64,000 nucleotides of DNA from Podarcis erhardii (Eukaryota), in assembly GCA_964252035.1 (NCBI GenBank), contig OZ176203.1; one strand, given 5' to 3'. Both the position numbers and the translations under genes were made by a program. Positions 45,463-63,351 of this stretch are shown here, piece after piece. Under the pieces are notes generated by a model that ran no database searches, was not told where the DNA came from, and was given only the letters and a program-made list of their open reading frames with translations. How positions within the stretch are numbered: the stretch's first letter is position 1; each line of letters begins with the position of its first letter.

Positions 45463-46929
45463 GTTAATCAAAGGCCTTCAGATTTTGTACATCAAACTCT
45501 GCATGGAAACAAAATGCATTTCTTACAGTAGTTTTTTTCAGTTGCTATAGATACAAAAATGTTTTGCCCCATGATAATATTGGGAAGAAACTTTCATGGC
45601 CAACACACTCATAGATGGCTTACCACGAAAAACATCAAATGTGCAAAGAAACTAACAATGTAAATGGGAGCGGGAGACGCGAGGGAGTCCAAAGAAGTGA
45701 TGAAACCATGTTTGTGACAGAAGTAAGATTGTTTATTATTTGTGCATTTATATTTAAAAACTTTAATAAATATTTATTAAAAAAAAAAACAAATGTGCAA
45801 AGAAACAGGGAACAAAAATCTCATCCTCTTGCATCCACTGAACTAACTCATCTTGGAACAGACCAATAATAGCCAACTAGTTTTCTGGTTGCCTATCTTC
45901 ATATTGCCAAAACAGAGTCATGAGGGAGGCACTGGTAGGCTTTGGTGACCCCACAAGGTTTGAAGAAATACAACCCCCCCCCCCCACACACAACTATTGT
46001 GGGAGGGAGAAGTTCTAAGGGGGTGGGTGGGGAGGGAAAACAGAAAACAGCCAATAAACACAGACCGTGTAAATAGCCAAGTTCCCTTCATCCCTGACCA
46101 CTGGTCCTGTTAGCTAGGGATGATGAGAGTTGTAGTCCCAAAACATCTGGAGGGCCAAGTTTGACCGCGCCTGGTATAAAGCATGCACCAAAATCTATCA
46201 GAGTGGGCTTAAAAGTTCCATACTGTATTAAGTTGTTCTCTAAAAATCTGCACCAAGTTAAGATATACTGCAGAGTAGTTCATCACATATTTGTTGCCAG
46301 CTGCACTGCATGTGGGTTTACTGTTGGCAAAAATATTAAGCGTTTCCAACCATAATTGTATCTCCAAAACTAATTTCTGAACATATAAAATGAGACTATT
46401 CAGCAGGATGGCTAGGCCTTGCCACCAAATACCAGCTGCTGGGGGCCAAAAGCAGGGCAGGGTTTTGGCCTTCAACCCCTGCTTGTAGGATTGAAAGGGG
46501 GCAACTGACAGGCCACTGTAGAAAGGAGAACTAGAGACAGCCTTCGTCTGAGGGCTCTTTATTGGTCCATAAATCCATAAATATGGGGGTGGGGGGGTTA
46601 GAAAGAAGAAGCAGCAAATCCTCATTTACTATTCCCTCATTTGACTACGATCATAAACACACGAATACCAATCCTATATATTATATAACGGTGCTTTTTT
46701 CTATTAAGAAAAAAGTTTAGATACTTTCATTTTGACTCAAGAGAATCACCATTTTATAGTTCAAATCGGGGAAAATAAACACAGTACATGGACAAAAGTA
46801 CAAAGATTCACAAAATGTTTAGCCCTGCGTGCTCCCAGGAAAAAAGCCCTGCATCCAACAGAGCTCCCGCCTATGTAAAAACAGCACATGGCCAAGGCTG
46901 CAACACAGAGCAGAGACGTCTGCATTGGG

Positions 46930-48305: not shown

Positions 48306-48777
48306 ATTTAAAATGTAGATGGATTTAATGTTGACTCATGACACATGGTATTTTATCAATAAAGATCTTATGTCAATGCCATGGCTAAATTGTGCTTTGG
48401 CTCATAACTGGTGCCATGGCTTACAATGCAAACAAGCCCAATGCAGTTTTCTTGAAGCACGGTCCTGTGCCTTTCTACTCAGAAGCAAGGCCCACTCAGT
48501 TCAGTAAGACTTACCGTACATCTAGGTAGGTGTTATAAGATTGCAACTTGGGACTCTGCATAGGTTCCAAAGTGGTGTACCAGTTTATTATTTTTTAGCT
48601 TACAAGGGGTAATTTATAGAACCAAAATCACACAAAATTCAAATAAAAGCCATTCAATGCTATTGTTGCAAAAGGTTTGATAGAATCACCTTTTTAGCTG
48701 TGAATAAATTAACCATCTCATTCTTTCTGATATTAATGTTCCTTTTTAGTTACTTTGAAATTTCCTTGGCAGGGAGA

Positions 48778-49063
48778 ATGTCTAGTACTCCAGTAGCTGT
48801 GGTGACTGGATCCAACAAAGGCATTGGGCTGGCCATCGTGCGGGCTCTATGCAAGAAGTTCACTGGGGATGTTTACCTAACAGCCCGGGACATCCAACGG
48901 GGCAAGGAGGCAGTGGCCAAGCTTCAGGAAGAAGGGCTGAAGCCACAGTTCCACCAGCTGGACATCACTGATCTGCAGAGTATTCAAACCCTCCGTGATT
49001 TCTTGAAGGAGAAGTATGGAGGATTAAATGTGCTGGTCAACAATGCAGGGATTGCTTTCAAAG
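48778..49063 (+). CDS. CBR1: CBR paralog A coding exon 1 (MSSTPVAVVTGSNKGIG...NNAGIAFK)
   Basis: ATG at 48778 within ORF 48700..49080; AAAG|GTAAAA donor. Confidence 0.95.
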
Positions 49064-50527
49064 GTAAAATACATTTATAGTCTTTGGCTGCAATCATGCA
49101 GTCTGGCTGCAGGTTAACTCTTCTTCAGGCTCCAGCCTTTGTCATTTTCTCTCTTGGTGAGTGGATGTGTGTCACTTTCTGGTGCTTCCTCACTTTAATT
49201 GCCTGGTTACCTGCACTATGAACAGGTTACTAGGAAGAATTGTCCAGAGTAATAGACAGAGCATTTCTAATTGCCAGCCGCAGAGTGTGGTGGAGCAGCA
49301 TAGCCATACCCACAGTGCTTCTGCTCATGCAGGCTGGGATAGAAGTTGAGGGGAGCAGGAAAAACGTCTAAACTGGCAAAGCAATCAGGTCCAGTGCCAT
49401 ATAGTGATGTGAGAGGCACTGGATCATGGTCCGGCTCAGCCCCATCACTAGTGAGGCTTTTTGTGGGACATCAGCTGTGGGAATCCTGTCAGTGGTACTT
49501 CCAGTGGGTTGATTGGAAAGCTCTGTGCTGGAAGAAGGAGGTTGGTGCCGTATCAAGGGCAGAGGATGGCTTTTGGGTGGACCCCTTCTAATACTTTAAT
49601 TGTAATGGTGTGCCATATCATCTGGATATAGTATTTTTTCTTATAAACTATTTATTTGTTTTATTGATGTTTATTCTCACCCTTTAAAAAGAAAATTTTC
49701 TAATGAATATTCAAAATAACACTAAGCTAATGAAGGAACAAAAGCAGGTTTTTACAAAGTTTATATTTTCATAATGTCCATTCTGATTTTTGTTTGCTTT
49801 CTCCCTGCCATCTGGCAAAAAGTTGCAGATACAACTCCATTTGCTATACAAGCGGAAGTCACACTGCGAACAAACTTTTTTGCAACAAGGGATATTTGCA
49901 GAGAATTGCTACCACTGATGAAACCTAATGGTAAGTGCTCCACACTGACTTTAGGGGAAAATATATTTAGATTTAGGCTGTAACCTTGCACTTAACTGGG
50001 ATCAAGGCCTATTGAACGCAACATGAGGTGGGGTGGAGGCAACAAGCTTAACTAAGGCTAGTTTCTTCTTAACATTTTCCCTTTTAATAGGCAGAGTGGT
50101 GAACGTATCTAGCATGTGCGGGGCTTCAGCGTTGTCCCAATGCAGCCAAGACTTGCAGCAGAAGTTTCGGAGTGACACAATCACTGAAGAGGAACTAGTG
50201 AAACTCATGGAAAAATTTGTAGAAGACACCAAGAAAGGAGTGCATGAAAAGGAGGGTTGGCCAAGTACAGCTTATGGCGTGTCCAAAACTGGATTAACGG
50301 TTCTGTCCAGAATTCAAGCAAGGCAGCTGAATGAGACGAGGAAAGGTGATGGTATTCTCCTGAATGCCTGCTGCCCTGGGTGGGTCAGGACTGACATGGC
50401 AGGTCCCAGAGCCCCAAAATCTCCTGATGAGGGAGCTGAGACTCCAGTGTATTTGGCCCTTTTACCCCCTGGTGCTGATGGGCCTCACGGCCAGTATGTT
50501 AGTGAAAAGAAAGTGCAGAAGTGGTAG
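48778..50527 (+). CDS. CBR1: Carbonyl reductase [NADPH] 1-like, paralog A (SDR family), 3 coding exons, 276 aa, intact
   Basis: Exons 48778-49063 (286 nt), 49823-49930 (108 nt), 50091-50527 (437 nt); GT-AG introns. TGxxxGxG (TGSNKGIG), NNAG, catalytic N113/S139/Y193/K197, CCPGWVRTDMAG. CBR1 versus CBR3 orthology is not resolved. Confidence 0.94.
49823..49930 (+). CDS. CBR1: CBR paralog A coding exon 2 (VADTTPFAIQAEVTLRTNFFATRDICRELLPLMKPN)
   Basis: 108 nt; AAAAAG| acceptor, G|GTAAGT donor. Confidence 0.94.
50091..50527 (+). CDS. CBR1: CBR paralog A coding exon 3 (GRVVNVSSMCG...VQKW*)
   Basis: TTTTAATAG| acceptor; YGVSK catalytic motif; TAG at 50525-50527. Confidence 0.95.
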
Positions 50528-52105
50528 TTGTTCAGTGTACACTGAATAATGCATTTGCAGTGTTACTACTAGCTTGATTACTAGCAGTAATAGTGCAAAA
50601 GCAGATGTGGACTCTTCCACTGGGATCTGCTGTAACAGTCGTGGCAGGCTCACTTGCAAAGGAAGAAAGTGTTTCATAAATGCTTCATATTGTCTGTTAT
50701 GCACCTGTGCAAATAACTATTTTGGTTTGGTGTGTGCATGTGGCAGTTGGTGAGCATCTTTTTGCTACATTTGCTCTTCCCCGGATTTGGGAAGCTGTCT
50801 TGGCTTAATGTGTATTTTCCAGCTATTTTGAATTATTTTTGTTTCACAATGTGTGAAAACCATTTCCTTTTTGAATTTTAAAATGTGTATACATGATTTT
50901 CTCTCCTGTGCAAGGCTGTTTTGTTTAACACAGAAATCAAGCCATTATAGCCTTCACTGCAAATATGAATGCATGAAATAAGTAAAATGGACATGATGGC
51001 TTAGCAAATTTAATTTGGGCTGCTGTGGTGGGGAGGGTGCACGTGGGCTGTATAAAGAGAACCAATTTCTACTCTTAAACCCCTAGAAATAATTCACTCC
51101 ACTGTTAGCATAGCAAAGATCCTCCAAGTTCAGGAAAACACAAAGGATCGTTATTACACATTATATAATTGTTAGAAAATAAAAGTTGAATGCTTTCTCT
51201 GTAAAAGGATCTCTTAACACCCGTACAAATGAAACTGAAACTAATATTCATGGATCTTTGTTTTTGATTAATAAAAATGTATTCTAAACAATATACATGC
51301 ATGCAATTTTCATATGTTTGATGACAAAGCACATATTTAAAAATAAAAGGCTTGACCATGTTTACCTCTGGTTTTTTTGTTATATTTTAAGGGGTCTGCA
51401 TAAAGCAGAAAGGGGAGAGATGCACTTATCCTGTATTGTTTTGTTTTTAAAAACTATACAAGTGATGGGGAAAATTGTGTTTTCTACATATAAATGATCT
51501 TATGAATGCCATATTATACAGAGCCATCTCAGTGACAATGGAAACACTACCTGTGGGAATAAATTCACCAGCAGTGCTGTACCACCTTCTCCCAATCAGT
51601 ACCAATAGACTTCAATGATTTTTAAAAACCAATAATACTTAGGCATTATTTTTGGAATAATCAATTAATTTTAATTTTGAATCTTGAGAAGTTGACCTAT
51701 CATCATACACAGTATGATAGGAATCACTTCTCCAAGTACTTGCCAAAACAGTACCATCCACACACAAGAAATAAGTAGCAGTTAGCTTGGGAAAAACTTA
51801 AGATTTGCAAAAGTGGGCTGGGGTGGGGGGGCTCAGTGGAGAAAATAGCCCAATGGGAACTTAAGTGGACATAATGCTGATTGTTGGAATGGAGGTGGGG
51901 ACTAGAATCCTGAAGTGGAATAGTCCATATGGCAACAATTAGCTGCAGATTCCACTTCCCAAGCAATGAAATGCAGGAGCATGTTTTGTTCATTTTGGTA
52001 AGCCTCCTTTTCTCGACTAATTTGGCAGCCCCACCTGCCCTTCTTTCTTACACACAGCCAGGGGCTGACTGGGCCTGTGACTGGCTTTGACCCTACTGCT
52101 GGGCT

Positions 52106-52932
52106 CCATGATCACTGCAGATGCTGACAGCAGTCCCAAAATTAAAAGAGGCCTGCTTCTTGGGAGAAAAGTGATGACAAACCTAGACAGCATCTTAAAA
52201 AGCAGAGACATTACCTTGCCGACAAAGGTCCGTATAGTTAAAGCTATGGTTTTCCCAGTAGTGATGTATGGAAGTGAGAGCTGGACCATAAAGAAGACTG
52301 AGCCAGTGTGGTGTAATGGTTAAGAGCGGTAGTCACGTAATCTGGGGAACTGGGTTCGCGTCTCCGCTCCTCCACATGCAGCTGCTTGGTGACCTTGGGC
52401 CAGTCACACTTCTTTGAAGTCTCTCAGCCCCACTCACCTCACAGAGTGTTTGTTGTGGGGGAGGAAGGGAAAGGAGATTGTTAGCCACTTTGAGACTCCT
52501 GAAGGGGAGTGAAAGGTGGGATATCAAATCCAAACTCTTCTTCTTCTACTACTGATTGCCGAAGAATTGATACTGTTGAATTATGGTGCTGGAGGAGACT
52601 CTTGAGAGTCCCATGGACTGCAAGAAGATCAAACCTATCCATTCTTAAGGAAATCATCCCTGAGTGCTCACTGGAAGGACAGATCCTGAAGCTGAGGCTT
52701 CAATACTTTGGTCACCGCATGAGAAGAGAAGACTCCCTCGAAAAGACCCTGATGTTGGGAAAGATTGAGGGAACAAGGAGAAGGGGACAACAGAGGACGA
52801 GATGGTTGGACAGTGTTCTCGAAGCTACAAACATGAGTCTGACCAAACTGCGGGAGGCAGTGGAAGACAGGAGTGCCTGTCGTGCTCTGGTCCATGGGGT
52901 CACGAAGAGTCGGACACGACTAAACAACAACA
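52106..52932 (+). mobile_element. 5'-truncated BovB (RTE) LINE, RT C-terminus and (CAA)n tail
   Basis: ORF track peptides SRDITLPTKVRIVKAMVFPVVMYGSESWTIKK and RRIDTVELWCWRRLLRVPWTARRSN…LRLQYFGH; (CAA)n tail; 11-bp TSD ACTGCTGGGCT (52095-52105, 52933-52943). Confidence 0.92.
52302..52550 (+). mobile_element. Squam3-like tRNA/MIR-derived SINE nested in BovB
   Basis: A-box GTGGTGTAATGG, B-box GGTTCGCGTC, CORE-like GGTGACCTTGGGCCAGTCAC, (CTT)n tail, ACTGA duplication at 52297-52301 and 52551-52555. Confidence 0.82.
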
Positions 52933-54379
52933 ACTGCTGGGCTGCCCTCCCAGTCCCTTTGGGCACCACCCATGGCTGCTTCTGCTAGTAAAACATGAAG
53001 CACCCAATTTTCATCAATTGTACCACTATCCACTCACCCTGCAGCCCTCTGTGCCATATCCCATACTTTTGTGGAAGATCTGGCAACTTTCGGCAGCACA
53101 GGGGGCTGCAGTGAAATAAGGAGATGAGCTTAGATGAGCAAAAATGCTTTCCATAATCTCAACTCTTCCGCTCACGTAATTTTATTTTCTCCTCATTTTA
53201 GTTACAGTACTGTACTTGTCTATAGGTTTCCCTTTCCTGACTTCCTCTGTTGCTTCATGTCAGATTTCAACTTCTTCTAGCCGCTAATCAACTTCATGGC
53301 CTTGGTGCTTCTTATCTTTGTTCCTTTTCCTCTATTCTCCTTAGCCTCTTGGCTAACCACAAATCTTCCGTTTATACCTCCCTTCCTTTGTTCTAGTTTT
53401 TATCTTCAAGGTTTATTTCTTGTGCTAACTTCTTCCCTAAGTAATTATTTTGTATTTTTATGTTGTGAACCACTCTGTGATCTTCAGATTGGCAGTGTAC
53501 AAATTTAATAAATAATACTAAACTCATTCTCTCTCTCGCATTGTCCTTGCATTGTCCCACCACCACCATTTTCTCTCTATGCCTAGGCTAATGCATGTAG
53601 TCTCTCTTTCTTCTTTTTACTTTGTTCAACCTTTGCAAAGTTTCCACACTCCCTCCAATTCCTCCTTCCCTTCTTTTCTTATTTTGAAAAATAAAACCCA
53701 GTACAAGTTCCTGTTTTCAGGCTCACCACTAAATACAGTAATAATAATAATGGTGAGCCTTCAAGCAGGAACTTATATTGGGTTTTTGTTGTTGTTTACA
53801 GCACCAAGCACATATTAGCCACATTATAAATGATGAATTATAATGAATTTGACACATATGAACTGTGCCATTTTTAGCTTGTTTACACATAGGTTTGAAC
53901 ACAGGCGCAAACTATTTTAACACATCTTCAAGTTTGTGTGAAGAGTGTGCACTTGTTGTGTTGTAGTTTGTGCATGTTGCTACACAGCTTGTACACAAGC
54001 TGAATGTAACTTGCAAACACCCCTATTGCAAGGACATTTAATTTAAGAAATGATCCACTTTGAACTCAGTGGGATTTATTTCTAAGTAAACATAAGGCTG
54101 TGGAAAGTGCTTTCCCCTTCCCTCTTCCTGAGGACATACTTGCAAACATAAAAGCTGCTTTTAGGTTTGTACGTGTCTCTTCTCCCATACACAGATAATA
54201 CTCCTGAATGTAGAATATGTTACCTAACTTCAGACTGTTGCATAAACAAACAAGAGGGCACAAAGCTAATACCCAGAGGAGCAGATATATCTTTGAGTTA
54301 CTCAACACTCTGCATCTGTTTTGTTTCAGATTCTCCTATAGGCTACATTCTAATATTCTCTCTCCTCCTTAAATGCTCG

Positions 54380-54511
54380 AGGCTCTATACAGCTGCCAGG
54401 AAAGGCGGGCCTCCAGCCTTTCCACCATAGCAACCTTGTCGTGCCTGCTCTGTGCAAGGGAAGACGGAAGAGAGTCAACAGCAGGCGCTGCACAGAATCA
54501 GCAGGGTAAGT
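54380..54511 (+). promoter_or_regulatory. Candidate promoter and non-coding first exon of CBR paralog B
   Basis: GC box AGGCGGGCC near 54405 and consensus donor CAGG|GTAAGT at 54506, about 590 bp upstream of the ATG, which sits behind AG acceptors. Confidence 0.45.
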
Positions 54512-55092
54512 TCTTGTTCTTGTTCTTTGATTGCATGAACCTGCTCAATTCTGTTGATAATCTAAAAAACCTCCAGGGTAGATTATGGCCTCCCTGCTAC
54601 GTCTCTGTAAGTTGCAGAATAAAATAATGTGTAAAACAATGTTCAAAGGTCAGGAAGAGCCAATAGGCACACCCTGGGAATGGAGGTTTCAAAGCAATAC
54701 TCCAAACCACATGCTCCAACTCAGGCAGTCCTTCATCTTTGCAACAGGTATAAATATACTCATCCAGTGAAGTTGCCATTCCATGTGTCTGGCTTCAGAC
54801 AAAAAACAACAACAAAAAAACACCCTTATGCCACAATAAATTCACAGGTTTTTTTAAAGATGCCACAAGATTTTTTGTGTTTGCTGCAAAAAAACATGTT
54901 TATGGAATTACTCCAGCAAATTGTTTTTGAAGTTTTCTTGCTGATTATGCTATGCTACCCCAGAGTAAGTGCTTTCGGGTAATGCAATAATGCTGTTCTG
55001 ACGCCATACAGAAAACATGCTCGGTTATGTGGATGTGTTTCTTCCTAAGGTGTCTCCCGTCCTACCTGATCAGAATCCGCTTGGCAGAGAGG

Positions 55093-55381
55093 ATGTCTAA
55101 GAGCATTCCAGTGGCTGTGGTGACTGGCTCCAACAAAGGCATTGGGCTGGCCATCGTGCGGGCTCTATGCAAGCAGTTCAGTGGGGATGTTTACCTGACA
55201 GCCCGGGATGTGGAACGGGGCAAGGAGGCAGTGGCCAAGCTTCAGGAAGAAGGGCTGAAGCCACAGTTCCACCAACTGGACATAAATGACCTGCAGAGTA
55301 TCCGAACCCTACGCGATTTCTTGAAGGAGAAGTATGGAGGATTAAATGTGCTGATCAACAATGCAGGGATTGCTTTCAAAG
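55093..55381 (+). CDS. CBR1: CBR paralog B coding exon 1 (MSKSIPVAVVTGSNKGIG...NNAGIAFK)
   Basis: ATG at 55093 within ORF 55027..55569; AAAG|GTAAAA donor. Confidence 0.95.
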
Positions 55382-58300
55382 GTAAAAACAGTTCAGTTTC
55401 TGGAAAGAAAGTATACGGAGATCAGGTCTGCCTGGGAGCACCACAGTCTGATACAAAATGGTATTGTTGGTCCCTGATGAGTGGGAAGTTGAACTCACTG
55501 CAGTTACTTGGTGGTCAGGAAACTTTCATTCACCTTATTTCATATATTCTGGGCTTACCCCAGGGCTAAGAACAGATGCTGAGCTGAGCCCTCTGACCAA
55601 AGTTAAGAACTGGGTAAAAGTACTTTTAACAGTGTACTTTGGACACAATGCAGTAGTTAAATATTCGCCACACTGCTTGCGACTTTCATGGGTGCTGCAG
55701 CTCAGGGCAGCTGCATACATTACTGTTTTCCAATACAGAAAATGCATCAATAGGACTAAGCGTGAGAGCTGAATGTAAATAATCCAGTGTACCAATCTTG
55801 CATATGAGTACAGTGGTACCTCAGGTTACAAACGCCTCAGGTTACAAACACTTAGAGTTACAAACTCTGCTAACCCAGAAGTAGGACCTCGGGTTGAGCT
55901 TTGCCCCAGAATGAGAACGGAAATCGCGTGCCAGCGGCACGGCAGCAGCGGGAGGCCCCATTAGCAAAAGTGCGTCTCAGGTTAAGAACGGTTTCGGGTT
56001 AAGAACAGACCTCCAGAACGAATTAAGTTCGTAACCCAAGATACCACTGTATTCACTGCATGTACACATGTGCAACTTCATTTCTGATGGGCTACACTTG
56101 AACCTATGTTTCTTAATACACGATAAATTCTTTTGCATGCAGCAAAGAATAATCTGTGATGGAAAACTGCAAAACATATACAATTAATGTTTGATAAAAA
56201 TGCAATTTGTTTCTTGCATTTCCTGTGGAAACTATAATCAGAATAGTTAGATAATCAAACAATCATTCAGAAAAAGGTACTTTGCAGTTTGATTATTGGT
56301 TAGTTGCAGAGACAGAAGCAGCTAAATGTTTGTTAGTGATCTTTCTCACTATACAATACATAACTGTCCCATGCAGAAAGTAAGTAATGAAAAACACAGA
56401 GTACCTGGTGGATAGCTGGCAACTATCTATTATTATTACTAATTAGCAGTAGTAGTAGTAGTAATAATTCTGAATGAGAGGTGATACTTTTAGCCTGCTC
56501 TTAACTTTATTCTTGCACACAGAAACCATGGGTACACAGACATAAAATCAATTGTACAGTGGTATCTCGGGTTACATACGCTTCAGGTTACATACGCTTC
56601 AGGTTACAGACTCCGCTAACTCAGAAATAGTACCCCGGGTTAAGAACTTTGCTTCAGGATGAGAACAGAAATCATGCGGTGGCAGCGCAGCAGCAGCGGG
56701 AGGCCCCATTAGCTAAAGTGGTGCTTCAGGTTAAGAACAGTTTCAGGTTAAGAACGGACCTCCGGAACGAATTAAATACGTAACCAGAGGTACCACTGTA
56801 CATATTAACAAGGCAAATATAATTTCATGTTCTACAACAGAAATGAAAATTATTCCATCTAGATTTAATGTGGGTTTGTGTGTTACTGTTATTTTGTAAT
56901 TTAAACATCTGGACACAATAAAATATATGTCATTCCCTCTCTTGGCATGTACAAGCAGCCAGAACTGCGACAAACAATGCTAACTCAAGTGAAAGCAGAT
57001 GGTGTGGGAGCTTTGCACATCTTCAACATGTTTTTTTAAAAATTATGACATCCTAGACAGTTCTGACATGTGTGTTTGTGACAGCCACCCTAGGTCTTGT
57101 GCCATCTGTGGAGAGTGTGTTCCCGGCTAGCATAGAGTACACCCCTCTACTCAGCAGAGTCTCCCCCTTTAAACAATAGGTGCCACTAGATGAGGTGTAA
57201 ATATTTCCACAGGGCTGTCCTTTATCAGCCGGCCTCCAAATTTCCCTGAGGTCCCCTTGAAGCCTCGTAAGGTAGTGTGGTATTCTATCTTCCAAGCTTG
57301 AGGGTGTTAAAAATAAGCCAAGACCACGCAGGGTTATGAAACAAGTTCTAAAGTTTACTAAACCTGGAAAAATGTGGAGATTTTAGAAAAAGATATGCAG
57401 TGGAAAAGTTACAGAAAAGCAATATATTCCCTTTAAGGCAAAATGGATTAAACCACCATCTACTTTCCCTGGACGAAACAGTCCCTTAATCCAGGTTTAC
57501 AAAGTTTTTCCTTGTCAGGTTGAGTTCCACCTTGAACTGCCCATCTCCTACTTTTATATTGTTATGAGTTGGGAGGAGGGGAGGCTGTACGCCTGACCCC
57601 CTCTTCTAATCCCTGGATCCAGCACATTTTCAGTTACTGAAATGGCTGGCTAATGAGTCATTACGGGTAGGGAGTGGCTCTGTGCCAGAGGGCCAGGGTG
57701 GAGGGTGGAGTGATATGAGCTAGAAGCTGGGTGCAAAAGCTGCAGGCTGGAAAGTCAGAGAGAAAGCCAAGCCTGATTTCTGCTGGAATCCAAGGCTGTG
57801 GCTGTGGGAGAAGCAAAGCTCTCTTAGGGCATTAATGCTGTAAACCCCTCCATTGCCTCTTGGGCTTGCCAATCAGAAGGTCGGCAGTTCAAATCCGCAC
57901 AACGGGGTAAGCTCCCATTGCTCTGTCCCAGCTTCTGCCAACCTAGAAGTTCGAAAGCACACCAGTGAAAGTAGATACCGTATTTTTCGTCCTATAGGAC
58001 ACTCCGTCCCATAGGACGCACCTAGTTTTTTGGGGGGGAAATAAAGGGGGGGAAATTACCTTTATTTCCCCCCCAAAACCAGGTTGGGGAAACCGAACCA
58101 GGTCGAGGAACAGCAGGATGGCGGCGCTGCGCCTCCCTGCTGTCCCCCGAGCTTGTGGGGCTGGCCGATGTCTGCACGGCGCGCGGGGTGCTCTGCTTCA
58201 GAACGCCCTTCCCACCGGGCGGCAGGCTGCTATCCACAGTGTGGGGAGTCCTGCGGGGAACTCCTGCAGGGCTCCCCACGCTGCAGATGTTTGCCCGGCG

Positions 58301-59901
58301 TGTGGGGCGCTCCGCTTCAGGGCGCCCCGGGCGGCAGGCTGCTATCCGCAGCAAGGGGAGCCCTGCGGGGAACTCCTGCAGGGCTCCCCACGCTGCGGAT
58401 GTCTGCCTGGCACGAGGGGCGCTCTGCTTCAGGGTACATTTCGCGCCGGGCGGCAGGCTGCTATCCGCAGCGTGGGAAGCCCTGCGGGGAACTCCTGCAG
58501 GGCTCCCCACGCTGCGGATGTCTGCCCGGCGTGAGTGGCGCTCTGCTTCAGGGCGTCCCTCGCACCGGGTGGCAGGCTGCTATTCGCAGCCTAGACAGCC
58601 CTGCGGGAACTCCCGCAGGGCTGCCTAGGCTGCGGATATGTTCCCGAAGCGCCGGGCGCTCTGCTTTCAGCACGCCCCGCGCTCCGGGAAGCAGGCTGCT
58701 ATCCGCAGCCTAGACAGCCCTGCGGGAGTTCCCGCAGGGCTGCCCAGGCTGCGGATGTCTTCCTGAAGCCTGGAGAGCGAGAGGGGTCGGTGCGCACGGA
58801 CCCCTCTCGCTCTCCAAGCTTCAGCGAAAGCCTGCATTCACCCCATAGGACGCACCCAGATTTCCCCTTCATTTTTGGAGGGGAAAAAGTGCGTCCTATA
58901 GGGCGAAAAATACAGTAAATAGGTACCGCTGCGGCGGGAAGGTAAACGGCGTTTCTGTGCGCTCTGGCACGCCTCATGATGTCCCGTTGCCCCAGTAGCG
59001 GTATAGTCATGACTCGGAAAGCTGTCTGCGGACAAACACCAGCTCCCTTGGCCTGAAGTGAGATGAGCACCGCAACCCCATAGTTACCTTTGACTGGACT
59101 TAACCATCCAGGGGTCCTTTACCTATGTATATATACTGTATATCATAAAGACATCACAGCCTCTGCCATGCCTTATTCCAAAAGGAAACATGAACCCTTC
59201 ATTGATGCGTGAACCCCTGGTATTTTCTACTACTCAGAGATTGGGGTGGTGTGCAATAATATAGGTTCCTGTCAATCACATGAAGCACCTTAGCCAGAGA
59301 TGAGGCAACTCTCACATACCAAGGAGTTTTAATTAACTTGATATTTGAGCCTTGAGGTATTTGCTAGGTTTCCAAGTTAACCCTATAATCCCCCAAACAA
59401 GCAGACAGGTTATTGAACAAGTAAAATATACAACAGCTGGTTGGGGGTTGATGGGATAGTCTAAAACATCTGGAGGGCACCAGGTTATTAAAGGCTGTAG
59501 TAAGGTTTTCAAGAATGTTACAGCTGCACAATGTAATTTCAACTGACGTTGACCATAAGTGGACTATGTTGTTTGCCTTTTTAGTGTACGTGCTGGAAAG
59601 ACTGTGTGCATTTGTACCTTAATGCATATTTTTGTATTTCCATTTTCTTTGCCCAATAAAAAGTGGAGGACCCCACACCGTTTCCTACACAAGCAGACGT
59701 GTCCATGAAAACGAACTTCTTTGCAACCAGAAATATTTGCAACGAGTTATTGCCACTTATTAAACCACAAGGTGAGCTTTACATTTTCATCCTGCAGGAC
59801 TAAATATTGTATTTTTAAATAGTCACAACCCATCCTGGGACCTTATAGTAGGGCAGGTAGGAAATAAAAATGAATAACTATTAATAACAACAGACAAACA
59901 G

Positions 59902-59937
<36 letters not shown>

Positions 59938-59945
59938 TAATAATA

Positions 59946-59978
<33 letters not shown>

Positions 59979-61439
59979 TATTATTTATACCCCGCCCTCC
60001 CCAGCCAAGGCCGGGCTCAGAGTGGCTTACAAGCAATAATAAAAACAAGATGAATGATTACAAACTTAAAACCAAAAATAAAATACAACATTAAGATAGA
60101 CAGACAGACCAACTGAGCTTTTCAAGTCTGATCCTGTTCTTTACAGCCATCATGTAAAGACGATAGGATAGCACTCTTTATGTAGTACATGAAACAAGAG
60201 ACAAATAGAAGTTGAACTAAGCCAGATAGGGCTTAGTGAGGTTTATCACATGGATTTATTGAAGAAGAAGGGGCAGGAGGAGCAAACTGGATTTGTTTTC
60301 TGCTCTGTACGATACAATATTGTACAATCAGCAGCGTGTCAGATGATTCAGATTTCTAGCTATTTTGAGAAGCTAGTGAAATTACTGGCATCATACTGCA
60401 CTATTGATCAACTCTGAGTAACTGCTGCATTCTATCTTGAAATGTCCAAACATTGTATACAGTGCTTTTTTTCTGCATACCATTGAGTACCCTCAGAAAA
60501 AAGCACTGTGTGTATGTGTTAAATGCCACTGTGATAGCCTTCAGAGCTATTAAACTCAAACTACACAGCATATATATTTTAGATTTTCCTTCAACCCTTT
60601 CTTATTTTAGAATATCTCCATGGCATCATAGAAAGGTTTCTGTTCCTGTGTATGAAACTTGCTTATGATTAATTCTTCATTATTTACTTGCTGTATGACA
60701 CTTATTATTTGTACTTGCTCTGCAGAGTATTGGGTTGAACGCAATCATGGGCATAGCCAAGGGGGGGTGGGGGTAGCAATACAAATAAATTTGGGGTAAC
60801 AATACAAATAAATACAAATCTGAGGTTCTGCCCCCCTAACAAAAATCCTGGCTACACCCATGTACCCAATGTTAGTGTTACTCAGAGGGGACCCGTTATA
60901 AATAACCTAGGTCTGCCCAGTATGTCTACTTTGAGTGCAACTGAGTTGGATATGGCCCATTGGTTATTATGGAATTATCTTTCTTTTCTTTTTTTGTCAC
61001 AGGAAGAGTAGTGAATGTCTCCAGTGTCGTGAGTGTCCGGGCATTAGCCATGTGCAGCCCAGAACTACAGCAGAAGTTTCGGAGTGAGACAATCACTGAA
61101 GAGGAACTAGTGAAACTCATGGAAAAATTTGTAGAAGACACCAAGAAGGGAGTGCATGAGAAGGAGGGCTGGCCAAATACAGCTTATGGGGTGACCAAAA
61201 TCGGGGTAACGGTTTTGTCCAGAATTCAAGCAAGGCGCCTGAATGAGACGAGGAAAGGTGATGGTATTCTCCTGAATGCCTGTTGCCCTGGGTGGGTCAG
61301 GACTGACATGGCAGGTCCTAAAGCCCCCAAATCTCCTGATGAGGGAGCTGAGACTCCAGTGTATTTGGCCCTTTTACCCCCGGGAGCCGATGGGCCCCAC
61401 GGGCAGTTTGTTAGTGACAAAACGGTTCAACCTTGGTGA
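55093..61439 (+). CDS. CBR1: Carbonyl reductase [NADPH] 1-like, paralog B (SDR family), 3 coding exons, 277 aa, intact
   Basis: Exons 55093-55381 (289 nt), 59664-59771 (108 nt), 61003-61439 (437 nt); GT-AG introns. TGSNKGIG, NNAG, N114/S140/Y194/K198, CCPGWVRTDMAG (Trp as in CBR1). Confidence 0.94.
55811..56049. mobile_element. Tigger-like MITE, copy 6 (CBR-B intron 1)
   Basis: Same TIRs and body, TA TSD. Confidence 0.9.
56557..56798. mobile_element. Tigger-like MITE, copy 7 (CBR-B intron 1)
   Basis: Same TIRs and body, TA TSD. Confidence 0.9.
57077..57850. mobile_element. Possible LTR-derived sequence in CBR-B intron 1
   Basis: Starts TGTGACAG; minus-strand TATA-like (AATATAAAAG, about 57560) and AGTAAA (about 57355) in LTR order; the other boundary and a TSD were not found. 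Confidence 0.3.
57978..58915. mobile_element. Non-autonomous Tc1/mariner-pogo superfamily (Tc2/Kanga-like) MITE carrying an internal hairpin array
   Basis: TIRs CCGTATTTTTCGTCCTATAGGAC / GTCCTATAGGGCGAAAAATACAG; TA duplication at 57976-57977 and 58916-58917; subterminal CCCATAGGACGCACC repeats. Confidence 0.88.
58167..58760. repeat. GC-rich tandem repeat, about 5 units of about 119 bp, each made of two hairpins
   Basis: The GCAGGCTGCTAT(C/T)C motif recurs at about 58221, 58333, 58452, 58571 and 58690 (spacings 112, 119, 119, 119). Confidence 0.92.
59664..59771 (+). CDS. CBR1: CBR paralog B coding exon 2 (VEDPTPFPTQADVSMKTNFFATRNICNELLPLIKPQ)
   Basis: Not in the ORF track; read by hand. 108 nt, AATAAAAAG| acceptor, G|GTGAGC donor, in frame with exons 1 and 3. 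Confidence 0.93.
59904..59980. repeat. (AAT)n immediately followed by (ATT)n
   Basis: Read directly. Confidence 0.9.
59950..60095 (-). mobile_element. L2-type 3' tail with (ATT)n expansion
   Basis: TTATTTATACCCCGCCCTCCCCAGCC…CTCAGAGTGGCTTACA, the reverse of the L2 tail. Confidence 0.65.
60746..60862. mobile_element. Small hAT-like MITE in CBR-B intron 2
   Basis: Termini CATGGGCATAGCCA / TGGCTACACCCATG. Confidence 0.6.
61003..61439 (+). CDS. CBR1: CBR paralog B coding exon 3 (GRVVNVSSVVSVRAL...VQPW*)
   Basis: Long polypyrimidine tract plus TCACAG| acceptor; YGVTK; TGA at 61437-61439. Confidence 0.95.
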
Positions 61440-61489
61440 ATTTTGGCATGTGCCCAATTTTATGGCACTCTATTCTAGTTGAGATCAGA

Positions 61490-61676
61490 CAGGCTACTGC
61501 TCCCTACTGAGCCTCCAGTGCCTACTGAAGACTAATTTTATTCCAGCAGGCATTTTAATTGTAGTTTTCTTTTATAGTTTTAACTGATTTTTATTTTTTA
61601 TATTCTTTGTAAATCACTTAAAGGCTATTGTAGTGAAGTGCTATATAAATTGTTTTAATAATAACAAATAAAATAA
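61490..61676 (+). mobile_element. L2 LINE 3' end just downstream of the CBR-B stop
   Basis: CTGAAGACTAATTTTATTCCAGCAGGCATTTT (degenerate LKT.LFQQAF end of L2 ORF2), T-rich UTR, …GCTATATAAAT…AAATAAAATAA tail. Confidence 0.6.
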
Positions 61677-63351
61677 CTGGAGCTTATCTGAGATACTGCA
61701 GCTGGCTCTTAATGAGTAGAGCTCTTGAAAAGAGGAGGATGGATGGGAAAAAAAATTAAGCTTCCCTTTTGCTCTGTGGTCAGTTACAATCACAATATTA
61801 ATTTAAACACTATACTACTCTGTACAACTTCACACGTAAGGAAACATGTACAAGTCTCTCACCCACATACACAAACACCTTCTGTCGCTACTCCCATGTG
61901 GTGGTTTTTTTTACATCTCTAGTGCTGCCTTCACCCTTAAAAAAAAATAGAGATGCTGGGTGTTTAAACCAGGGCCCATGCCCTGTAACCCCAGATTAAT
62001 AGGTGCCAGCTGTAGTTATTCAATGTGGAGGAAAATACAGACATAGCCAACATAGTTAAACAAAGTAAAATAAAGATCCCTGTCATATGAGCCCTTGCAT
62101 TGAAAACCAGCTGCTGGCTAAAATGATGCCCTATGATTAACCTCTTAATTCCTACTATTTTGTTATATCCCTCCTGTAAAAAAAAAAAAAGAAGTGGAGC
62201 CAAAAGCTTGCTGTTCCTTCTTTTACATCTCTGCTACTTGTAAGAAAATGAGAATGCAAAACCACTTTGCAGGAGAAATTAAATGCAATTATATTGGTAC
62301 GGCTAACCTATTCTATATATGTAACTCTAAATCAGGCAAATAGTATTTTACATGAACTTTTGTGAGATTTGAATAAATTATGAACTGTTACAATGACCTG
62401 CTTATTTAGAGCTTCTTAACATCATGATTAAAGTTTTTTTTATTAGGTTACTTTTTAAATATTCTTTGTTTCAAAGCCAAGTTACCGTATGATCAGCAAA
62501 CCAATCACAAACCCAGCTATCCATGTCCCTAAAGATCAAATCACCCACTACCATGGTCAGAAAAGGAAACCAGAACTGCTGCGTTAGGAGAAACAGGCAA
62601 GCTTTCCAGAGAAGCCCCCACCAGAATACTTCCCATCTCACTGATCTGTTCCAGCAGCTGGAGCAGATTTGCAGGATCAAAGCTGTTGGTGGAACAAAGA
62701 TTGAGTGGGATGCAATTATCATGTCCTATGAAGGTCTCATCTACAAACCTCTGTTTATCCAGGTCAACTACCTTGGTCCCAAGGGAGCAAACTAACTCCC
62801 TGAGGTCCAGGACTGATTTGCACTGAGTATCCCACCCCTGATTCTGTCCATCAGGAAGACATACAACATTCTGTGCTACACTGGATAGCTCCTACACCTC
62901 TGCTGGCATTCTACCAGCAGATATTGTTGTTGAGCGAGTTAATTTACTTGGGAACCTGGGGCTTGTAAGTTCACTAAGGGGAGGGACACAGTAGTCTGCC
63001 CTGTTGCTGAACTTGCTTGGCTGCCTTACTTTGGCTCAAGGCGCAGCTCTGACACTTGGGCACGCAGAAATGTATATTCAGCCTAGTCTCTCCTAGGTTC
63101 TACTTTTGTAGCCCTGGCTAAATTCCTCCAGCTGCTGATGCAGGAGGTCCTCATTTGAAAATCACAGAGAGCTGCTGCTCAGCTACTAGTTTCATCCAAT
63201 CCTAGTGAGCAGGAATATGAAAGGTGGGTTAGGTTAATATACATACAGTATGTGTGTGTTATTTCTGAGCAATGAATTATTCAAGGGATACAACAGTCAC
63301 GCAAGGTTCAGCTCACTGGAGGCTGTGATATTTTTTGCAATTTATGGTTTA

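What the first reader, a model, noticed from the sequence alone, without database searches (positions are those of the whole stretch)
48778..61439. Two CBR1-like paralogs form a sharp sequence mosaic: signature of segmental gene conversion between ancient duplicates
Hand counts, A versus B: exon 1 from the PVAVVT codons on, 18 differences in 274 nt (about 93% identical); exon 2, 34/108 (about 69%, most synonymous sites differ); exon 3 first 65 nt, 28/65 (about 57%); exon 3 middle (50156-50467 vs 61068-61379), 18/312 (about 94%, with identical runs of 59 and 53 nt); last 60 nt, 17/60 (about 72%). Flanking introns show no similarity beyond a few donor bases. Near-identity at synonymous sites beside near-saturated blocks cannot come from purifying selection alone. 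Inference: an old duplication with recurrent conversion of the cofactor-binding and scaffold segments. From memory, mammalian CBR1 and CBR3 also share a near-identical exon 1 core, so this may be a parallel process across amniotes.
Basis: partly seen in the sequence, partly recalled or inferred. Interest (0 to 1): 0.75.

Follow-up and report, generated by a model that had tools for sequence, protein, structure and literature searches.

The report
Gene conversion mosaic in lizard CBR1-like paralogs
Two neighbouring carbonyl-reductase genes of a wall-lizard-like genome are old duplicates that have repeatedly copied parts of exons 1 and 3 onto each other while exon 2 and a substrate-pocket segment stayed distinct; this is a clean, apparently unreported example of a well-known process.

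Summary
Two intact three-exon CBR1-like genes lie in tandem: A at 48778-50527 and B at 55093-61439. The proportion of synonymous sites that differ (pS) is about 0.15 in exon 1 and mid exon 3. It is about 0.8, which is saturated, in exon 2, the first ~50-65 nt of exon 3 and the last ~57 nt. In 20000 codon shuffles, none matched this patchiness.

Ortholog comparisons give similar pS in all blocks, so synonymous constraint does not explain the pattern. Introns share no homology, and the locus holds only these two copies (SETD4 | A | B | DOP1B in Lacerta agilis).

Block-wise trees from six squamate species, a turtle and a crocodile do what conversion predicts:
- Exon 2 groups by paralog (support 99/96), and the turtle copy falls with B.
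- Exon 1 and mid exon 3 group by species or lineage.
- AU tests reject the opposite topologies.

Tracts differ between lineages. In Rhineura a recent B-to-A tract runs about 45-60 nt into intron 2. The lacertid events are old and predate the Podarcis-Lacerta split.

This is interlocus gene conversion between old tandem paralogs, a known process. I found no paper describing it for carbonyl reductases. The scan has not noted it on other DNA of this genome.

The parts
48778..49063 (+). Gene A exon 1 (start codon to phase-1 donor); NADPH-binding Rossmann start with the TGxxxGIG motif
   Evidence: Pfam adh_short, E = 3.6e-18; one search aligns it to human CBR1 residues 4-95.
49823..49930 (+). Gene A exon 2 (108 nt); never-converted block carrying A-type residues
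   Evidence: pS against B is 0.78.
50091..50527 (+). Gene A exon 3, including the TAG stop
   Evidence: 1wma residues 133-276, E = 1.5e-74.
55093..55381 (+). Gene B exon 1 (one codon longer than A)
59664..59771 (+). Gene B exon 2; never-converted block carrying B-type residues
61003..61439 (+). Gene B exon 3, including the TGA stop
48765..49069 (+). Converted tract 1, A side. It runs from 13 nt of 5'UTR to 6 nt of intron 1 and pairs with 55080-55387.
   Evidence: blastn gives 91.9% over 308 nt. pS is 0.17.
55080..55387 (+). Converted tract 1, B side
   Evidence: In the exon 1 tree, lacertid A and B form one clade (94/94).
50141..50469 (+). Converted tract 2, A side (mid exon 3: catalytic Tyr-x-x-x-Lys and the Trp229/Ala235 loop). 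It pairs with 61053-61381. The left edge lies between 50140 and 50156. The right edge lies after the identical run that ends at 50469.
   Evidence: pS is 0.15.
61053..61381 (+). Converted tract 2, B side
   Evidence: In the mid-exon-3 tree, lacertid A and B form one clade (99/97).
50091..50140 (+). Unconverted start of A exon 3 (catalytic Ser139 and the pocket-wall residue 141 = Cys). The B counterpart is 61003-61052 (residue 141 = Val).
   Evidence: The role of residue 141 comes from PMC2741203.
50470..50527 (+). Unconverted 3' end of the A coding sequence. The B counterpart is 61382-61439.
   Evidence: 17/60 differences; pS 0.79.

Best explanation
A and B are old tandem paralogs of the monomeric NADPH carbonyl reductase CBR1 type. 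They lie between SETD4 and DOP1B in a lacertid (Podarcis-like) genome. They have been partly homogenised by interlocus (non-allelic) gene conversion.

Shown:
- Two separate tracts were copied between the genes in the lacertid stem lineage, before Podarcis and Lacerta split. One covers almost exactly exon 1. The other covers about 330 nt in the middle of exon 3.
- Exon 2, the first ~50 nt of exon 3 and the last ~58 nt kept the original, saturated divergence.
- The same two regions were homogenised independently, with different edges and ages, in Tiliqua, Rhineura, iguanians, Lerista and turtles.
- Exon 2 was not converted in any of the five squamate species with both full coding sequences.

Inferred:
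- Tracts end at or near exon edges because the introns had already lost all homology, so heteroduplex DNA cannot extend far into them.
- Exon 2, at 108 bp, is too short an island of homology to seed conversion.
- Selection for paralog-specific substrate-pocket residues (for example residue 141, Cys in A and Val in B) may help keep the start of exon 3 distinct.
For: Within species:
- Block-wise pS is 0.15/0.80/0.15/0.79 in the window and almost the same in Lacerta agilis.
- The patchiness exceeds all 20000 shuffles.

Between orthologs:
- pS is similar in all blocks.
- Both copies are under purifying selection, with pN/pS of 0.12-0.17.

Locus structure:
- Homology is confined to exons, and the window holds no third copy.
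- The Lacerta locus reads SETD4 | A | B | DOP1B, and the window is collinear with it at about 90% identity.

Trees:
- Exon 2 splits A from B with support 99/96, and the turtle copy falls with B.
- Exon 1 and mid exon 3 pair A with B within lacertids, Tiliqua and Rhineura (94-99).
- The AU test rejects monophyly of the B copies for exon 1 (p = 0.0002) and for mid exon 3 (p = 0.0015).
- The AU test rejects the species pairing for exon 2 (p = 4e-8 for lacertids; p = 1e-4 for Tiliqua).
- Protein trees of 43 sequences show the same pattern and add Lerista, Emydura and Carettochelys pairs.

Tracts at DNA level:
- In Rhineura, A and B are identical over the last ~42 nt of intron 2 and differ at 2 of the first 359 nt of exon 3. 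The shared sequence is B-type.
- In Tiliqua, homology reaches about 1.1 kb upstream of exon 1.

Assembly: short-read contigs from three samples of different studies span the edges of the mosaic blocks.
Against: - No conversion event was seen directly.
- In the window itself both tracts stop within a few bases of, or inside, the exons, so non-coding support comes only from other species.
- The two lacertid tracts have the same pS. That is a coincidence if they were separate events.
- Donor direction in lacertids is only weakly indicated, as A to B for exon 1.
- The placement of the turtle copy with B rests mostly on amino-acid changes, because synonymous sites are near saturation.
- The groups used in the AU tests were fixed by the hypothesis, but I had already seen a first set of trees.
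Confidence: 0.92

Rival explanations
1. Uneven selection at silent sites: exon 1 and mid exon 3 carry splicing, mRNA-structure or codon constraints that keep synonymous sites alike in both paralogs, with no exchange of DNA.
For: The similar blocks encode the most conserved protein parts, namely cofactor binding and the catalytic Tyr/Lys.
Against: - Ortholog pS is as high in these blocks as in the others: Podarcis versus Tiliqua gives 0.36-0.44 against 0.39-0.52.
- In these blocks the paralogs of one species are closer to each other than each is to its own ortholog.
- The trees pair A with B within lineages.
Confidence: 0.02
2. Young duplication plus replacement: A and B arose recently (pS ~0.15), and one of them later received exon 2 and the exon 3 edges from a third, divergent carbonyl reductase gene.
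For: The two similar blocks have the same pS (0.17 and 0.15), as a single duplication date would give.
Against: - Introns and flanks share no homology, although a pS of 0.15 would leave about 85% identity.
- No third copy lies in the window or between SETD4 and DOP1B in Lacerta.
- Both A-type and B-type exon 2 have orthologs across squamates, and B-type also in a turtle.
Confidence: 0.02
3. Repeated unequal crossing-over (cycles of gene birth and death producing hybrid genes) built the mosaic, and not conversion without crossover.
For: Tandem, same-strand paralogs can misalign. In Tiliqua, homology extends about 1.1 kb upstream of exon 1, as a crossover product might show.
Against: - Mid exon 3 is an internal patch with divergent sequence on both sides, which needs two exchanges within about 330 nt. 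That amounts to a conversion.
- Copy number is two and gene order is conserved in every squamate that has both copies.
- Introns remain paralog-specific.
Confidence: 0.04
4. Assembly artefact: the similar blocks come from collapsed or chimeric assembly of the two copies.
For: De Bruijn contigs of sample X1 break at the shared blocks, and one contig mixes A-type and B-type letters.
Against: - The blocks are 93-94% identical. They are not 100% identical, as a collapse would give.
- The same mosaic is present in Lacerta agilis and, with other edges, in four further independent assemblies.
- Podarcis muralis database proteins are 99.6% (A) and 97.8% (B) identical to the two models.
- Contigs of three samples cross the block edges into unique sequence.
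Confidence: 0.01

Closest known systems
Interlocus gene conversion limited to parts of tandem paralogs while selected sites stay distinct, for example ATP1A1 paralogs of Leptodactylus frogs (bioRxiv 10.1101/2020.08.04.234435) and sodium-channel paralogs of Taricha newts (PMC8476164); both appeared
   Same: Tandem or linked paralogs are homogenised over most of their length. The function-defining positions escape homogenisation. The signature is block-wise discordance between paralog trees and species trees.
   Different: - The protected parts here are whole blocks (exon 2, the start of exon 3 and the C-terminal end), whereas those cases keep scattered sites.
- No adaptive trait is known here.
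- Protection may be purely mechanical, from a short exon flanked by non-homologous introns.
- The pattern recurs over a much deeper time span, across squamates and turtles.
Human CBR1 and CBR3 (PDB 1wma, 2hrb; Pilka et al. 2009, PMC2741203)
   Same: - Same enzyme family, with full-length ungapped alignment and the same genomic position between SETD4 and DOP1B.
- The human pair also has a nearly identical exon 1 core at protein level: 2 differences in about 62 residues. Its exon 3 is much more diverged.
   Different: - Both lizard copies score closer to CBR1 than to CBR3 in every exon.
- Both carry the CBR1-type Trp229 and Ala235, so B is not demonstrably a CBR3 ortholog.
- Conversion in mammals was not tested at DNA level here.
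Classic exon-restricted conversion between tandem duplicates such as the primate red/green opsin genes and the fetal globin genes (from general knowledge, not checked here)
   Same: Tracts of a few hundred bp, confined to conserved exons or their flanks, give concerted evolution of parts of genes.
   Different: Those duplicates are much younger or retain homologous introns. Here the introns are wholly unrelated, and the duplication is probably older than the lepidosaur-turtle split.

Membership tests
Monomeric NADPH carbonyl reductase of the CBR1 type (classical short-chain dehydrogenase/reductase) | Match to the short-chain dehydrogenase domain | tested here: met
   Pfam adh_short matches exon 1 at E = 4e-18 (A) and 7e-18 (B). 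The exon 3 pieces taken alone fall just below the cutoff, as expected for fragments.
Monomeric NADPH carbonyl reductase of the CBR1 type (classical short-chain dehydrogenase/reductase) | Full-length ungapped similarity to solved CBR1, including the CBR-specific helical insertion after the catalytic Ser | tested here: met
   - Exon 3 of A and of B aligns to 1wma residues 133-276 without gaps, at E = 1.5e-74 and 6e-80.
- Exon 1 aligns to residues 4-95.
- Exon 2 aligns to residues 97-131.
Monomeric NADPH carbonyl reductase of the CBR1 type (classical short-chain dehydrogenase/reductase) | Cofactor motif TGxxxGIG and catalytic Asn113, Ser139, Tyr193, Lys197 | tested here: met
   All are present in both translations at the positions aligned to 1wma. 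The residue roles come from PMC2741203.
Monomeric NADPH carbonyl reductase of the CBR1 type (classical short-chain dehydrogenase/reductase) | Enzymatic activity on carbonyl substrates | not testable with these tools
   This needs expression and an enzyme assay.
CBR3 orthology of gene B | Second CBR gene, next to DOP1B, downstream of the first copy on the same strand | tested here: met
   The Lacerta agilis locus reads SETD4 | A | B | DOP1B, and the window is collinear with it. The human gene order is from my own knowledge.
CBR3 orthology of gene B | CBR3 hallmark residues Gln142, Pro230 and Asp236 | tested here: not met
   B has Val, Trp and Ala at the aligned positions (hallmark residues from PMC2741203). 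Two of the three positions lie in the converted block, so this result is weak evidence against orthology.
CBR3 orthology of gene B | Closer in sequence to CBR3 than to CBR1 in unconverted blocks | tested here: not met
   Exon 2 of B scores 49.5 bits against CBR1 and 45.9 bits against CBR3. It shares the ATRN-x-CNELLP string with CBR3 but the rest with CBR1, so the result is ambiguous.
Interlocus (ectopic) gene conversion between paralogs | Sharp block-wise differences in synonymous divergence between paralogs of one genome | tested here: met
Interlocus (ectopic) gene conversion between paralogs | Tree discordance: converted blocks group by species and unconverted blocks group by paralog | tested here: met
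   including the AU tests.
Interlocus (ectopic) gene conversion between paralogs | No block-specific drop in synonymous rate between orthologs | tested here: met
Interlocus (ectopic) gene conversion between paralogs | Tracts include non-coding DNA | tested here: inconclusive
   This is met in Rhineura (about 45-60 nt of intron 2) and probably in Tiliqua (5' flank). In the window only 13 nt of 5'UTR and 6 nt of intron are shared.
Interlocus (ectopic) gene conversion between paralogs | A conversion tract seen segregating or arising | tested here: inconclusive
   One X1 contig carries A-type letters at eight B exon 1 sites (55275-55314). Bubble popping during contig assembly explains that equally well.

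The most novel reading that the evidence does not exclude
The mosaic may be actively maintained and shared across amniotes. Under this reading, conversion has kept homogenising the cofactor-binding and catalytic core of the two carbonyl reductase copies for more than 250 million years, in squamates, turtles and perhaps mammalian CBR1/CBR3. Selection would purge every tract that overwrites exon 2 and the pocket-wall segment after Ser139. The conversion cold spots would then mark the residues that define each paralog's substrate range.
Probability: 0.3. Interest if true: 0.55.

Novelty: new member of a known kind. Interest (0 to 1): 0.35.

Why it matters
- It is a clean, well-controlled example of partial concerted evolution. 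The same gene pair shows independent conversions of different age, extent and direction in several reptile lineages, beside one exon that was never converted.
- It warns that whole-gene trees and automatic names (all these genes are called 'CBR1-like') cannot settle CBR1/CBR3 orthology in reptiles, because most of the coding sequence has been overwritten.
- The unconverted blocks single out candidate specificity residues, such as position 141, for enzymology of a drug-metabolising enzyme family.
- It does not reveal a new mechanism.

Tried and rejected
- GC3 as a sign of GC-biased conversion: exon 1 is GC3-rich in single-copy species too, so this was uninformative.
- Polarity of the lacertid exon 1 event: both lacertid copies are nearer to Rhineura A (pS 0.25-0.38) than to Rhineura B (0.46-0.49). 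But Rhineura B is far from everything, so this gives only a weak hint of A to B.
- IQ-TREE runs: standard bootstraps and a 43-protein ultrafast run timed out. I replaced them with ultrafast bootstraps on the DNA blocks, FastTree and treekit.
- Exon 3 used alone as a protein query found only fragments and short isoforms because of the length filter. Full-length relatives were reached through the stored snake protein P0010.
- Literature: three searches found no paper on gene conversion in carbonyl reductases. The one paper naming CBR1, CBR3 and gene conversion treats them separately.
- Reads: only contigs were served, so they cannot show alleles or expression levels.
Searches were made exon by exon by reference, and exons were joined only inside local scripts to compute pS and trees.
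- Not used: no human DNA. Human CBR1 and CBR3 appear only as PDB chain alignments printed by the tool.
- A CBR3 sequence from a non-human species could not be obtained, so orthology to CBR3 remains open.
Full report
**What is there.**

Reading 48600-50700, 54800-55600 and 57000-61700 and translating the pieces gives two intact genes on the + strand. Both have three exons, the same splice phases and GT/AG at every splice site.
- A: exons 48778-49063, 49823-49930 and 50091-50527 (276 aa).
- B: exons 55093-55381, 59664-59771 and 61003-61439 (277 aa, one extra codon after the start).

Exon by exon, both genes align without gaps to human carbonyl reductase 1 (PDB 1wma), more weakly to pig CBR1, and more weakly still to human CBR3. 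Exon 1 matches Pfam adh_short. The TGxxxGIG cofactor motif and the residues aligned to Asn113, Ser139, Tyr193 and Lys197 are present in both (residue roles from PMC2741203).

**The observation.**

| Block | Synonymous sites that differ (pS), |
|---|---|
| Exon 1 | 0.15 |
| Exon 2 plus the first ~75 nt of exon 3 | 0.80 |
| Middle of exon 3 | 0.15 |
| Last 57 nt | 0.79 |

Shuffling codons 20000 times never gave as patchy a distribution of differences. Shuffling third positions alone gave the same result.

Outside the exons the two loci do not match. Homology runs from 13 nt before the start codon to 6 nt into intron 1, and within exon 3 from 50141 to 50508. The window holds no third copy.

**Where the window comes from.**

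Exon 3 of B, used as the query, found only short forms. One of these, a stored rattlesnake protein (P0010), reached full-length relatives.
- A is 99.6% identical to a Podarcis muralis 'carbonyl reductase 1-like' protein.
- B is 97.8% identical to a second Podarcis muralis protein and 96.4% identical to one from Lacerta agilis.
- The window is collinear with the Lacerta agilis locus at about 90% identity through introns and spacers.
- In Lacerta the gene order is SETD4 (-), A, B, DOP1B.

The window is therefore from a lacertid lizard close to Podarcis. The two genes occupy the slot that CBR1 and CBR3 occupy in human (human gene order from my own knowledge).

**Test of the interpretation.**

I fetched the A and B loci of Lacerta, Rhineura, Tiliqua, Anolis sagrei and Sceloporus (for Sceloporus A, exons 2-3 only). 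I also fetched a gecko, a turtle B-like copy and a crocodile, and cut out the exons by their conserved structure.

pS between A and B of the same species, by block:

| Species | Exon 1 | Exon 2 | Exon 3 start | Exon 3 middle | Exon 3 end |
|---|---|---|---|---|---|
| Window | 0.17 | 0.78 | 0.84 | 0.15 | 0.79 |
| Lacerta | 0.15 | 0.74 | 0.63 | 0.18 | 0.81 |
| Rhineura | 0.54 | 0.77 | 0.00 | 0.03 | 0.48 |
| Tiliqua | 0.14 | 0.73 | 0.41 | 0.04 | 0.25 |
| Anolis | 0.38 | 0.62 | 0.85 | 0.42 | 0.36 |

Between orthologs, pS is much the same in every block. Podarcis versus Tiliqua, for example, gives 0.36-0.52. Low synonymous divergence in exon 1 and mid exon 3 is therefore a property of paralog pairs within a lineage. 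These stretches do not evolve more slowly than the others.

Trees agree.
- Exon 2 splits all A-type from all B-type copies with support 99/96. The turtle copy falls with B. The gecko and the crocodile fall with A.
- Exon 1 and mid exon 3 instead pair A with B inside lacertids, Tiliqua and Rhineura (94-99).
- In mid exon 3 the iguanian A and B pairs join weakly (74/62). In exon 1 Anolis A joins the iguanian B pair at 72/84.
- The AU test rejects a single B clade for exon 1 (p = 0.0002) and for mid exon 3 (p = 0.0015).
- It rejects pairing by species for exon 2 (p = 4e-8 for lacertids and 1e-4 for Tiliqua).
- Protein trees of 43 sequences repeat the pattern. They add same-species pairing in Lerista, Emydura and Carettochelys.

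**Timing and direction.**

In lacertids, A-B divergence in the converted blocks (0.15-0.18) is slightly above the Podarcis-Lacerta ortholog divergence (0.03-0.14). It is below the Podarcis-Rhineura divergence in exon 2 (0.30-0.34). The events therefore fall in the lacertid stem, and nothing in the window shows that they continue today.

Rhineura shows a recent event. A and B are identical over the last ~42 nt of intron 2 and differ at 2 of the first 359 nt of exon 3. The shared intron end and the following residues are B-type, so there the copy went from B to A.

In Tiliqua, similarity extends about 1.1 kb upstream of exon 1.

These non-coding extensions show DNA-level exchange. They also rule out a spliced-RNA template, which would in addition have erased the introns and converted exon 2.

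**How it most likely works.**

Shown:
- Repeated, lineage-specific, short (about 300-500 bp) non-reciprocal transfers between two same-strand genes 4-12 kb apart.

Inferred:
- The introns had lost all similarity before these events, so exchange can start and resolve only inside exons 1 (286 bp) and 3 (437 bp).
- Exon 2 (108 bp) is probably too short an island to take part. This would explain why it is untouched in all five squamate species with both full coding sequences.
- The start of exon 3 can be converted, as seen in Rhineura and apparently in Emydura. Its persistence elsewhere may therefore reflect selection. It holds the residue aligned to human Met141, a pocket-wall determinant of CBR1/CBR3 specificity (PMC2741203). 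That residue is Cys in A and Val in B.
- Trp229 and Ala235, the other two determinants, lie in the converted block and are CBR1-like in both copies.

**Rivals.**

- Synonymous constraint is excluded by the ortholog rates.
- A young duplication patched from a third gene is excluded for three reasons. Intron homology is absent. The locus has two genes. Both exon 2 types have old orthologs.
- Unequal crossing-over cannot easily produce an internal patch while keeping copy number and introns.
- An assembly artefact is excluded by the 6-7% difference within the blocks and by five other assemblies.
- Contigs from three samples of different studies cross the block edges into unique DNA.

**Reads.**

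Only de Bruijn contigs were served. They break at the shared blocks, as expected when 31-letter words are common to both copies.

One contig of sample X1 follows B, then A letters at eight sites (55275-55314), then B again. Bubble popping between paralogs explains this, and a segregating tract is not excluded.

A run guessed to be RNA, from a related organism, covers A exon 2, exon 3 and about 70 nt of 3'UTR. It does not cover the spacer outside the high-copy repeat. One of its contigs starts at the exon 3 acceptor with 28 unplaced letters. This is weak evidence that the A ortholog is transcribed and spliced as modelled.

**Comparison with what is known.**

Interlocus conversion that homogenises parts of paralogs while selected parts stay distinct is well documented, for example in frog ATP1A1 and newt sodium channels (listed). 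I found no report of it for carbonyl reductases.

Human CBR1 and CBR3 differ at 2 of about 62 residues in the exon 1 core, fewer than human and pig CBR1 differ there, while their exon 3 is far more diverged. I did not examine human DNA.

B sits where CBR3 sits but has none of the CBR3 hallmark residues, and it scores nearer to CBR1. Its orthology to CBR3 is unresolved. Conversion itself undermines any whole-gene answer.

**Verdict.**

The finding is a new, well-behaved example of a known process, of moderate interest to people who study gene family evolution or this enzyme family.

Noticed in passing
window 57978-58915: The hairpin-rich, inverted-repeat-bounded element in intron 1 of B, noted earlier by the scan, is missing from the orthologous Lacerta agilis intron. 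The alignment jumps from 57966 to 58916 in the window against 13202-13217 in L001. It is therefore a lineage-specific insertion.
   Followed up: partly
window 51934-53097 (weaker at 53292-53679): The spacer between A and B holds a very high-copy repeat. Summed contig word depth rises from about 20 to 10^5-10^6 in all four runs, with many internal deletion joints. It is probably an abundant transposable element family.
   Followed up: no
window 55129-55387 and 50327-50495: In sample X1 (best holder, possibly the source animal), one contig over B exon 1 carries A-type letters at exactly eight sites (55275-55314) but B-type letters on both sides. A contig over A exon 3 carries B-type letters at 50407, 50409 and 50416. 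This is either bubble popping between paralogs or polymorphic conversion tracts. Contigs cannot tell these apart.
   Followed up: partly
window 44741-45470 (minus strand): The 5' end of SETD4 lies here, inferred from collinearity with Lacerta L001 1-736, whose called product has SET and Rubisco-LSMT substrate-binding domains. SETD4 runs divergently from gene A, about 3.3 kb away.
   Followed up: partly
window 59900-59990: A long (ATA)n/(ATT)n microsatellite lies in intron 2 of B, followed by a GC-rich stretch that resembles the end of a repeat element.
   Followed up: no
L009 (Eublepharis) and L011 (Crocodylus), 10 kb downstream of the CBR gene: No second CBR copy was found by tblastn within 10 kb downstream, and the single copies have an A-type exon 2. 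If the turtle B-like copy is a true B ortholog, geckos and crocodilians lost B, or it lies further away.
   Followed up: partly
PDB chains 1wma, 2hrb and 1n5d as aligned: The human CBR1 and CBR3 exon 1 cores differ at 2 of about 62 residues. That is fewer than between human and pig CBR1, which suggests conversion in the mammalian pair too. This was seen at protein level only.
   Followed up: partly
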